Shown here: piece by piece, positions 49,781-52,018 of the stretch
Position numbering within the stretch: the stretch's first letter is position 1
How the letters are laid out: each line of letters starts with the position of its first letter
DNA from: Octopus bimaculoides
Taxonomy: Eukaryota
Direction of reading: 5' to 3'
Assembly: GCF_001194135.2 (NCBI RefSeq)
Contig: NC_068987.1
Span: 7,197,639 to 7,261,638, forward strand
Length of the DNA: 64,000 nucleotides
Notes under the pieces: model-generated
The model's input: the letters and a program-made list of their open reading frames with translations, nothing else
Told to the model about the DNA's origin: nothing
Databases searched by the model: none
Translations under genes and position numbers: made by a program

Positions 49781-52018
49781 AATATAAGCCAGCTATTTCT
49801 AATATATCGAAGGGGGTCGAGCTTTTTGAGAATACTCTATATGTGATAGAAGCTGTCATATTCAGAAAGAAACGATGAGAGAACGAACGATGTAGAAGAG
49901 CAACAAAGACTGCTATACAAATACCAAATTACAAATTAATATGACATACAGTGGAAACAATAATCCGAAGTTGAGAAATGACGCGCCACTCAGTTACTGG
50001 ATAACGGTGCAAACCGTTAGAATATACTCAATATACTCTCAGAGAAGGTTATTTTAAGATTACTATTTGTGGGAGAAGGAGATTTTGGCACAAAGTATGT
50101 CGGAGTTTCGTATATTTAACGCCTGTACACACTTTGCTGAAATATAAGGAAAAAGTATCTGCATATTAGTGAGTATCTGTATATTAGGTGAGTTGGTGTT
50201 TTTAAAAGTGTATAGATGAGTATGTGTGTATGCGCTTCTCATATGTGTATATGTATGTGCTTGTGGGTGATTAGAATATCGCAAGGCATAAAGGCCGCCA
50301 TTTCAGTGGTCCTCCTACTCTACTTCTTTCTTGTTTGTTGGTCTCTTTATATTGTTAATTCAAATTGTGACGACGTTGATAACGTAAGCAAGCAATGGTC
50401 AAATATAGGATTAATTTAATTGGTAATAGCCCCCTCTCTCTCCCTTCTCTCTCTCTCTCCAATAAATTTATGGCGTCGTGCCAAAGTAAGATATTAATGT
50501 ATTAAGATCAATAAAAGTATTAACCAAAATAATATCAAACAAGACAAAAATAAAATAAGGAGCTCACCATTAACAAAGAAAACAACAACCGCAACAACGA
50601 TAGTGGCATCAGTAATAAGAATAACAGCATAGATTTGACTGAAGTACCATTCCCTAGAAAACCTATATCACAATAATAACAGTACAGCAAAAGCAGTGGA
50701 ACAGAAATAACACATCAAAAGCAATAAGAAGACTAACAACAAAAATTACTAAAATAAAAATAATAAAAACCAATAAGAAAATCAAAAATGCTTCTATTAA
50801 CAGCGAAAAATCTCTACAACAAATATAATAATGATAACAACAACAACGACAGTATCTAGGGTACGAAATGATAGTTCTCTATGTTTGACTTCTAAATTTT
50901 GATCAATATTTTGCTTGCAGCCGATCAGTAACCATTGAAAACTCACTAAACTTTAGTGGAAGATTCCATTTAATTCTTTCTCCTATTATCCAAGTTGTAT
51001 GTCTAAAAGTATCCTTCGATTCTTTTGCTTCTTTTGCTTGATAATTGCAAGTTCAGTTCACATCATTACTGCATTACAAATTCTATGTTGACCAATCATT
51101 TGGTAATATCAAAAGAACCATTCAGTTTTGGTGGAAGTTCCCTTCAGGTGAGATCAATATGAACTTCCCCTTCTATCATATCTTTTTCTTTCCAACATAA
51201 CCAGTACAGACCTTCAATATATGCAATGGCACCTATATCTACATTGTACTTCAAATGATTAATAGGTAGGCAATACTCAAAATCAATATAGTTTTCAAAA
51301 ATCTAAAGGGGTCAAATGTTCTTTATTATTTTAACTGGAGTTATTGACGCACAAACGATGTTTTATAACAAGACAACTGCATAATATTTGCATGCGACAT
51401 GAGAGAATGTTCGTGTAAAAGAGATCAAAGTGTACATGACTATCGGAGTATTATCCAAGCCATTTCAACTAAATTATATCGAGTTTTTAGAAATTATTAT
51501 GCACTGTTCAGTATATTTCAACATTTACCTTCATTTTGTTTTTCTTTTCACGTGTTCAAACATCCGATAGGTCAGATGATGCTTTTTATAATCTGTTGTT
51601 GAGAAATCTGATAACGTATCTAGAAAATGTCCGCAAGTGATAAAAAGTCGGAAGATGGTTCAATTTACAATGCAATTCTCATAAAAATGCATAAAACATA
51701 GCTCGTTATAGAAAGCAACGATAGTATTTTGCACCTTTGAGATGATTGATAAAGGCATTTATTTATATTGAGTATATTCTAACGGTTTGCACCGTTATCC
51801 AGTAACTGAGTGGCGCGTCATTTCTCAACTTCGGATTATTGTTTCCACTGTATGTCATATTAATTTGTAATTTGGTATTTGTATAGCAGTCTTTGTTGCT
51901 CTTCTACATCGTTCGTTCTCTCATCGTTTCTTTCTGAATATGACAGCTTCTATCACATATAGAGTATTCTCAAAAAGCTCGACCCCCTTCGATATATTAG
52001 AAATAGCTGGCTTATATT
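49781..52018. repeat. Perfect 255-bp inverted repeat pair with 1728-bp spacer
   Basis: 49781-50035 is the exact reverse complement of 51764-52018 (checked base by base, no mismatches); no TSD in the flanks. Confidence 0.97.

What the first reader, a model, noticed from the sequence alone, without database searches (positions are those of the whole stretch)
49781..52018. Perfect 255/255-bp inverted duplication around a 1.7-kb ordinary spacer, with no TSD
Seen: the two arms are exact reverse complements and lie in one gap-free contig (47813-54980). The flanks (GTTACCAT / TCTACTTT) show no target-site duplication, the spacer has no transposase-like ORF, and the arm matches no other repeat I could see in the window. 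The other inverted repeats here are clearly diverged, so this one is very recent or kept identical. Inference: (a) a staggered-break micro-inversion that leaves inverted duplications, (b) a young foldback element of unknown type, (c) gene conversion between arms, or (d) an assembly artefact. If transcribed, it would form a perfect 255-bp dsRNA, a strong ADAR or endo-siRNA substrate.
Basis: partly seen in the sequence, partly recalled or inferred. Interest (0 to 1): 0.72.

Follow-up and report, generated by a model that had tools for sequence, protein, structure and literature searches.

The report
Young inverted duplication, likely template-switch copy
A 255-base stretch of ordinary non-coding DNA in a repeat-rich animal genome is present twice, perfectly identical and head-to-head 1.7 kb apart, and its edges look like a recent DNA copying slip rather than a jumping gene; this is a known kind of mutation and of modest interest.

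Summary
Arms 49781-50035 and 51764-52018 are 255/255 reverse complements separated by 1728 nt. They lie in a gap-free stretch (47813-54980), and arm and spacer are unique in the window.

Identity falls from 100% to background at all four edges. No protein domain, RNA family, tRNA, tandem sub-repeat or internal complementary region is present. No 3-11-bp target-site duplication exists.

The new finding is that each arm begins and ends with the same 6-mer: AATATA...AATATA on the left, TATATT...TATATT on the right. The empirical chance of this is about 0.001. Either arm therefore reads as a 249-bp inverted copy inserted at a pre-existing 6-mer.

A replication or repair template switch predicts exactly this: leave at the 6-mer, copy the other strand 1.7 kb away, return to the same 6-mer. 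A TIR transposon, a staggered-break inversion or gene conversion does not predict it.

Copy number in the genome, read support and the ancestral state could not be tested, because no resource here holds this eukaryote. Verdict: real, young, ordinary in kind, new as an instance. The dsRNA potential is real on paper (-463 kcal/mol), but transcription is unknown.

The parts
49781..50035 (+). Left arm of the perfect inverted duplication (255 nt, 35.7% GC, A-rich on this strand)
50036..51763 (.). Spacer, 1728 nt. It is unique in the window, has no ORF over 79 codons and no domain hit, and contains an A-rich low-complexity tract at about 50500-50860.
51764..52018 (-). Right arm, the exact reverse complement of the left arm
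49781..49786 (+). AATATA, the first 6 nt of the left arm (outer edge). It is identical to the last 6 nt of the same arm and is a proposed switch-point microhomology.
50030..50035 (+). AATATA, the last 6 nt of the left arm (inner edge), a proposed switch-point microhomology. It lies inside the perfect 2 x 9-bp tandem AATATACTC at 50021-50038.
51763..51769 (+). T+TATATT at the inner edge of the right arm. Together with 52012-52018 it forms a 7-nt direct repeat flanking a 249-nt insert-like unit.
52012..52018 (+). T+TATATT at the outer edge of the right arm, the second copy of the flanking direct repeat
49683..49726 (.). Weak inverted match to 52072-52114, in register (55 vs 54 nt from the arm edges). 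Whether it belongs to the feature is uncertain.
52072..52114 (.). Partner of the weak in-register block at 49683-49726 (about 33 of 46 aligned columns identical)

Best explanation
This is a recent, local inverted duplication of non-coding, locally unique DNA, written by a polymerase template switch during replication or break repair. It is not a mobile element.

Inferred steps: a growing strand stopped at a 6-mer (TATATT at the right site, or AATATA at the left site by the mirror reading). Its 3' end paired with the complementary 6-mer on the opposite strand 1.73 kb away. It copied 249 nt there, then re-paired through the newly made identical 6-mer with the place it had left, and carried on. 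The product is a 249-nt reverse-complement copy flanked by a duplicated 6-mer, which gives two perfect 255-nt arms.

Shown: the perfect arms, the sharp edges, the same 6-mer at both ends of each arm, and the absence of every transposon hallmark tested. Inferred: the mechanism, the young age (no difference in 255 nt), and the 'empty site' sequences ...GGCATTTATT TATATT TCTACTTTG... or ...GTTACCAT AATATA CTCTCAGAG.... Which arm is the copy is not resolved. The structure has no demonstrated function. If it is transcribed through, it would fold into a 255-bp perfect RNA duplex.
For: The perfect 255-nt arms are confirmed.

Identity stops abruptly. Gapped local and global alignments of the outer and inner flanks, direct or inverted, are at shuffle level.

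Each arm starts and ends with the same 6-mer. Only 0.07-0.13% of 255-nt segments of this window do so. On the right copy the flanking direct repeat is 7 nt.

Both switch points therefore carry 6-7 nt of microhomology to one and the same site, as a switch-and-return event requires. That event class is described in PMC5453318 (four-point model, the types that create an inverted repeat), in the MMBIR model (PMC2621351; one search lists it, and what I say of its mechanism is from my own knowledge) and in the study of foldback templated inverted insertions at breaks (PMC11724301).

Transposon hallmarks are absent: no domain, no protein relatives, no 3-11-bp TSD, no sub-repeats or own terminal repeats in the arm, no copy of the arm terminus inside the spacer, and no RNA family or tRNA-like part.
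Against: I noticed the 6-mer signature after looking at many features, so its p of about 0.001 should be discounted.

AATATA is a common word in this AT-rich DNA: it ranks 13th among 6-mers.

The template-switch events documented in the papers read are mostly much shorter: tens of bp with short range in PMC5453318, and 2-150 bp with a 41-nt loop in PMC11724301. A 249-nt copy across 1.7 kb is at the large end.

A weak in-register inverted match 55-98 nt outside the arms is not predicted by a de novo insertion (0/200 shuffles and 3/200 real-sequence pairs reach its score). It hints at an older, decayed inverted repeat.

Genome-wide copy number, read support and the ancestral state were not testable here.
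Confidence: 0.5

Rival explanations
1. Mobile-element origin. One form is a non-autonomous DNA transposon of 2238 bp with 249-255-bp terminal inverted repeats and a palindromic TA/TATA target duplication hidden in the outer 6 nt. The other form is two very young copies of one ~245-bp element that inserted 1.7 kb apart in opposite orientation into similar AT-palindromic targets.
For: Perfect long inverted repeats around a non-coding core are typical of young non-autonomous transposons. TA, AT, TATA or ATAT duplications are compatible with the ends. The reconstructed target..CCATAATA-TA-TATTTCTAC.., is an AT-rich palindrome of the kind Tc1/mariner elements prefer (my own knowledge). The window carries other transposon debris.
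Against: There is no transposase remnant. The ends lack a CAGT/CAGG-type motif. The arm has no terminal inverted repeats of its own, so it is not a MITE. No 3-11-bp TSD is present. No other copy occurs in the ~58 kb of called bases of the window. The identical 6-mer at the inner ends of the arms would be a coincidence of about 0.001, unless insertion is strongly target-specific.
Confidence: 0.2
2. Micro-inversion with an inverted duplication. The 1.7-kb spacer, plus one arm, was inverted. One breakpoint was staggered by 255 nt and filled in, or an equivalent template switch copied ~2 kb backwards, so the staggered stretch now sits at both ends.
For: The architecture is the one described for Drosophila inversions: inverted duplications of unique sequence, median 321 bp, sometimes from only one breakpoint (PMC1885836). 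The four-point model also has a type that gives an inverted repeat around an inverted spacer (PMC5453318).
Against: The junctions that would be new (L|arm with Rin|arm', or arm|Lin with arm'|R) share only 0-1 nt of microhomology (read). The shared 6-mer at both ends of the arm is unexplained. Strand-composition profiles give no sign that the spacer is flipped relative to its flanks, though that test is weak. The documented cases are chromosomal inversions, not 2-kb ones.
Confidence: 0.1
3. Assembly or library artefact. The window is a short-read scaffold with 19 gaps. The second arm, or the arrangement of the pieces, could have been created by repeat resolution, gap closing or chimeric molecules.
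For: There are many gaps and microsatellite-bounded contig ends. A perfect 255-nt repeat exceeds usual k-mer sizes, so spacer orientation and arm placement rest on read pairs. In-vitro polymerase chimeras also use microhomology (my own knowledge).
Against: All four junctions (two outer, two inner) have distinct unique flanks, so reads must exist for each. The arms are ~2 kb and ~3 kb from the nearest gaps. Hairpin-type assembly artefacts normally have little or no unique spacer (my own knowledge). Random chimeras are not expected to reach consensus.
Confidence: 0.1
4. An old inverted repeat whose inner 255 nt were recently made identical, either by intrachromosomal gene conversion or by Ripley-type template-switch correction of a quasi-palindrome.
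For: There is a weak inverted match outside the arms in exact register (55 vs 54 nt from the edges). The classic template-switch model converts a near-perfect repeat into a perfect one (PMC5453318).
Against: The 54 nt directly next to the arms show no similarity, whereas a gradient would be expected. Nothing further is in register out to 1.9 kb. The inner flanks show nothing. The shared terminal 6-mer is not predicted.
Confidence: 0.08

Closest known systems
Template-switch mutations that create inverted repeats (Ripley model; four-point model of Loytynoja & Goldman 2017, PMC5453318; FoSTeS/MMBIR, PMC2621351)
   Same: A reverse-complement copy of nearby sequence is written into the nascent strand. 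Microhomology is present at the switch points. The result is a perfect inverted repeat of previously unique DNA with no target-site duplication in the transposon sense.
   Different: The events documented in PMC5453318 are tens of bp long and lie within the same fork region. Here the copy is 249 nt and the template is 1.73 kb away.
Foldback templated inverted insertions at double-strand breaks (yeast, PMC11724301)
   Same: A 3' end primes on a short inverted microhomology on the same molecule and a stretch is synthesised. The product is released and joined, which lengthens or creates an inverted repeat.
   Different: The yeast events are 2-150 bp (most under 14 bp) with a 41-nt loop, and are captured by end joining with a median of 2 bp microhomology. 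Here the copy is 249 nt, the loop 1728 nt, and the same 6-7-nt word sits at both junctions. That pattern fits a return to the original template better than end capture.
Inverted duplications at inversion breakpoints from staggered breaks (Ranz et al. 2007, PMC1885836)
   Same: Inverted duplicates of non-repetitive sequence, a few hundred bp long, bracket a segment.
   Different: There the bracketed segment is a chromosomal inversion shown by outgroups, and the duplicates average 88% identity. Here the segment is 1.7 kb, inversion is untested, and the junction features do not point to it.
Non-autonomous TIR transposons with long terminal repeats (Tc1/mariner IR-DR type, MULEs, Foldback elements)
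   Same: Long inverted termini surround a non-coding core of about 2 kb.
   Different: There is no TSD of the lengths these families make (only a hidden TA is possible). There are no family-typical end motifs, no tandem sub-repeats, no transposase remnant and no other copy in the window.
Hairpin-RNA (hpRNA) endo-siRNA loci of Drosophila and long dsRNA substrates of ADAR (my own knowledge)
   Same: Inverted duplication with arms of a few hundred bp that would fold into a long perfect RNA duplex (-463 kcal/mol).
   Different: No evidence of transcription, small RNAs, editing or a target gene. The loop is long at 1.7 kb.

Membership tests
Template-switch inverted duplication (four-point model types that create an inverted repeat; FoSTeS/MMBIR) | A tract that is the exact reverse complement of nearby sequence | tested here: met
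   255/255 nt, template 1728 nt away
Template-switch inverted duplication (four-point model types that create an inverted repeat; FoSTeS/MMBIR) | Microhomology at both switch points, compatible with leaving and re-entering the original template | tested here: met
   The same 6-mer lies at both ends of each arm, 7 nt on the right copy. Chance is 0.0007-0.0013.
Template-switch inverted duplication (four-point model types that create an inverted repeat; FoSTeS/MMBIR) | An ancestral or allelic sequence that lacks the inverted copy and keeps one copy of the microhomology | not testable with these tools
   No collection here holds this eukaryote
Class II TIR transposon (generic) | Target-site duplication directly flanking the inverted termini | tested here: inconclusive
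   No TSD of 3-11 bp. Only palindromic TA/AT/TATA/ATAT inside the outer 6 nt is possible.
Class II TIR transposon (generic) | Transposase gene or remnant, or else membership of a multi-copy family | tested here: not met
   No Pfam hit, no protein relatives, no other copy in the window. Genome-wide copy number is not testable.
Tc1/mariner IR-DR elements | TA duplication, CAGT-like termini, and paired transposase-binding direct repeats at the outer and inner end of each ~200-250-bp repeat (my own knowledge of the family) | tested here: not met
   TA is possible, but the ends read AGCCAGC / TAAGCC. The only internal direct repeat is 14/18 nt at arm positions 45-62 and 237-254, not at the terminus.
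Foldback (FB) elements | Terminal repeats built of tandem sub-repeats; 9-bp TSD (my own knowledge) | tested here: not met
   TRF finds only a 7-bp x 3.3 and a 9-bp x 2 micro-repeat in the arm. No 9-bp TSD.
MULE / Mutator-like | Long TIRs with a 9-11-bp TSD (my own knowledge) | tested here: not met
   No 9-11-bp TSD even allowing 2 mismatches
DIRS-like retrotransposon (inverted termini, no TSD) | An internal complementary region that repeats the outer ends of the termini; tyrosine recombinase and reverse transcriptase genes (my own knowledge) | tested here: not met
   No copy of the arm terminus in the spacer; the best arm-spacer hit is 20 nt at 85%, E 1.9. No domains.
MITE or SINE (each arm as an independent copy) | MITE: own terminal inverted repeats and a TSD. 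SINE: pol III promoter or tRNA-like head, a tail, and a TSD. | tested here: not met
   The arm has no self-complementarity (z = 0.1) and no own TIRs. No tRNA or Rfam match. No per-copy TSD (read).
Staggered-break inversion with inverted duplication (Ranz 2007) | Inverted duplicates of unique sequence bracketing the segment | tested here: met
   The size is within the published range.
Staggered-break inversion with inverted duplication (Ranz 2007) | The bracketed segment is inverted relative to the ancestral arrangement | not testable with these tools
   No outgroup is available. Strand-composition profiles are uninformative.
hpRNA / long-dsRNA locus | Transcription through both arms; small RNAs or A-to-I editing on the arms | not testable with these tools
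   Only the folding energy could be computed

The most novel reading that the evidence does not exclude
The inverted duplication is transcribed, for example inside an intron or a non-coding RNA. It then acts as a newborn hairpin-RNA locus: a 255-bp perfect duplex that is hyper-edited by ADAR or diced into endogenous siRNAs. It would be caught at the moment a template switch created it. Alternatively, it is the first seen copy of a transposon family that inserts without a target duplication.
Probability: 0.06. Interest if true: 0.6.

Novelty: new member of a known kind. Interest (0 to 1): 0.25.

Why it matters
If the template-switch reading holds, this locus is a clean, unusually large example of how perfect long hairpins arise de novo from unique DNA: a 249-nt copy across a 1.7-kb jump. 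Such events are the raw material for hairpin RNAs, ADAR substrates, fragile sites and later inversions. The two predicted empty-site sequences make the reading directly testable in resequencing data. On its own it is a single neutral-looking structural mutation in non-coding DNA, so the practical importance is small.

Tried and rejected
- **Relatives outside the window:** none could be found.
  - 20 ORFs from the locus and the window are absent from the 15-billion-protein collection.
  - A 1732-aa concatenate of all stop-free translations of arms, spacer and flanks had no hit.
  - Exact arm 22-26-mers are absent from the metagenome and prokaryote genome collections.
- **Organism:** not identified.
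  - A transposon-like ORF at 20345-20929 has a single 74% relative, on a 673-bp ENA metagenome contig.
  - A literature search for a SINE-like string gave only irrelevant hits.
  - My impression that the window is cephalopod rests on memory of a SINE-like sequence and is unverified.
- **Relationship to the other inverted repeat** (34307-35212): rejected, because the alignment is noise.
- **Degenerate extension of the repeat:** rejected for the inner flanks and for the adjacent 54 nt outside. Only one weak in-register block remains.
- **Spacer orientation from AT/GC skew:** uninformative.
- **Arm as an RNA gene, tRNA-derived SINE or structured element:** no support.
- **Pfam on ten larger ORFs of the window:** only sub-threshold noise.

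Full report
**Observation.** The repeat is exactly as described. Arms 49781-50035 and 51764-52018 are 255 nt and 100% complementary, with 1728 nt between them (string check). The window is AT-rich eukaryotic DNA (about 31% GC) with 19 runs of N. The nearest gaps are at 47720-47812 and 54981-55176, so the whole structure sits inside one gap-free stretch, 2-3 kb from any gap. blastn of the arm and of the whole 2238-nt unit against the window finds nothing else; the next best arm hit is 39 nt at 79%. The only other genuine long inverted repeat in the window, 34307-34592 / 34927-35212, is 86% identical and unrelated to this arm.

**What is not there.** The unit plus 300 bp on each side, translated in six frames, has no Pfam domain. 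A concatenate of all stop-free translations of arms, spacer and flanks has no relative among 5.8 billion proteins. There is no Rfam match at gathering or at E <= 1 and no tRNA-like sequence. The arm does not fold on itself (z = 0.1). It has no terminal inverted repeats of its own and no tandem sub-repeats beyond two micro-repeats. The spacer holds no copy of the arm terminus, which argues against a DIRS-type internal complementary region.

**Edges.** Identity drops from 100% to background at all four edges. Local and global gapped alignments of outer flanks, inner flanks and all cross-combinations, direct or inverted, are at shuffle level. There is one exception. A 44-nt block 55-98 nt outside the left arm matches, inverted and in register, a block 54-96 nt outside the right arm. 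About 33 of 46 columns agree. None of 200 dinucleotide shuffles and 3 of 200 real sequence pairs reach its banded score. Nothing else is in register out to 1.9 kb. I leave this as unexplained.

**Target-site duplication.** A scan of every offset 0-12 and length 2-11 finds no duplication of 3-11 bp, even with mismatches. It does find that TA, AT, TATA or ATAT would be hidden inside the outer 6 nt of the repeat, because they are palindromic. It does not formally exclude a TA-duplicating family.

**The new feature.** The arm begins with AATATA (49781-49786) and ends with AATATA (50030-50035). The right arm correspondingly begins and ends with TATATT. In this window only 0.07-0.13% of 255-nt segments have identical first and last 6-mers. 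Because the 6-mers lie inside the perfect repeat, they are part of what was copied. Either arm can therefore be read as a 249-nt reverse-complement insert sitting between two copies of a 6-mer that was already at the site.
- The implied empty sites are ...GGCATTTATT TATATT TCTACTTTG... on the right and ...GTTACCAT AATATA CTCTCAGAG... on the left.
- On the right copy the flanking direct repeat is 7 nt (51763-51769 and 52012-52018).
- A transposon-type staggered cut cannot explain this, because the source copy carries the same 6-mers on both sides.

**Mechanism (inferred).** The pattern is what a switch-and-return template switch predicts. A nascent 3' end ...TATATT leaves its template and pairs with AATATA on the opposite strand 1.73 kb away. 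It copies 249 nt until it has again synthesised TATATT, re-pairs with the site it left, and continues. This is the class of event formalised in the four-point model, where some types create inverted repeats (PMC5453318). It also matches the MMBIR model (PMC2621351, listed; its mechanism as I describe it is my own knowledge of the paper). Experimentally, related events are seen as foldback templated inverted insertions at breaks (PMC11724301). The present event would be large for the class. Which arm is the copy cannot be decided. The 7-nt repeat on the right and the 9-bp tandem AATATACTC x2 across the left inner edge give only weak, conflicting hints.

**Rivals.**
- *Inversion with a staggered break.* This has the right gross architecture and duplication size (PMC1885836). 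But the junctions that would be new share 0-1 nt of microhomology, and the terminal 6-mer identity is left as coincidence. Strand-composition profiles do not show a flipped spacer, though that test is weak.
- *Transposon reading.* This has the higher prior in a repeat-rich genome, and a hidden TA duplication in an AT-palindromic target is possible. Every other hallmark is missing.
- *Old repeat recently homogenised.* This would explain the weak outer block, but not the lack of a similarity gradient or the 6-mers.
- *Assembly artefact.* This cannot be excluded without reads. However, each of the four junctions has its own unique flank, and the structure is far from gaps.

**Weighing.** I weighted the 6-mer signal after discounting it for having been found post hoc, then set it against these priors. 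That puts the template-switch insertion at about 0.5, mobile-element origin at 0.2, inversion at 0.1, artefact at 0.1 and old-repeat homogenisation at 0.08.

**Age and consequences.** No difference in 255 nt means the event is recent or the arms are kept identical. For a rate r per site per year, the 95% bound is about 3/(510 r), which is roughly 0.6-6 million years for r = 1e-8 to 1e-9 (inference, not measured). As RNA the two arms pair base for base: -463.5 kcal/mol for the arms alone, and all 255 positions are paired with their mirror partner in the fold of the whole 2238-nt unit. Whether the locus is transcribed is unknown.

**Limits.** No resource available here contains this organism. 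Twenty ORFs are absent from the protein collection and arm k-mers are absent from the metagenome and prokaryotic collections. The single relative of a nearby transposon-like ORF lies on a short ENA metagenome contig. The decisive tests are therefore left as next steps: copy number, read support, the empty site in relatives, and expression.

**Verdict.** This is a real and correctly described feature. It is most likely a young templated inverted duplication, a known kind of mutation in a new and rather large instance. Interest is low to moderate.

Noticed in passing
window 34307-35212: A second foldback-like structure: 286-nt arms at 86% complementarity around a 334-nt pyrimidine-rich (CT-rich) spacer. 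It is unrelated in sequence to the finding's arm, and no obvious TSD was seen by eye.
   Followed up: partly
window 49683-49726 and 52072-52114: A weak inverted match (about 33/46 columns) lies in exact register outside the two perfect arms. None of 200 shuffles and 3/200 real-sequence pairs reach its score. It may be the remnant of an older inverted repeat, or chance.
   Followed up: yes
window 50021-50038 and 51020-51039: Two perfect 9-bp tandem duplications (AATATACTC x2 and TTCTTTTGC x2.2). The first straddles the inner edge of the left arm.
   Followed up: partly
window 52660-52708 and 52817-52865: Two direct copies (80%) of a ~49-nt sequence (TTTTACTTGTTTCAGTCATTTGACTG..GGCCATGCTGGAGCAC). 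From memory it resembles a cephalopod SINE. The organism was not verified with the tools.
   Followed up: partly
window 54444-54891: A roughly 231-bp unit is present twice in tandem at 73-85% identity (repeat families D10, D13 and D16).
   Followed up: no
window 48679-48760 and 55328-55407: A direct repeat of about 80 nt at 81-88% identity lies 6.65 kb apart, on either side of the gap-free contig that holds the finding. It is probably two fragments of one dispersed repeat.
   Followed up: no
window 20345-20929: An ORF with a transposon-like C-terminal part (..NRPDIVVWD..) has no Pfam hit. Its only database relative (74%) is on a 673-bp ENA metagenome contig (ERZ23578778), probably host DNA in a metagenome.
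   Followed up: partly
whole window (19 N runs, e.g. 47720-47812, 54981-55176): In the ORF translations, most gaps are bordered by TA, TG, CT or GTA microsatellites. This is typical of contig breaks in a short-read assembly. Matches between N runs inflate repeat-finder output.
   Followed up: partly
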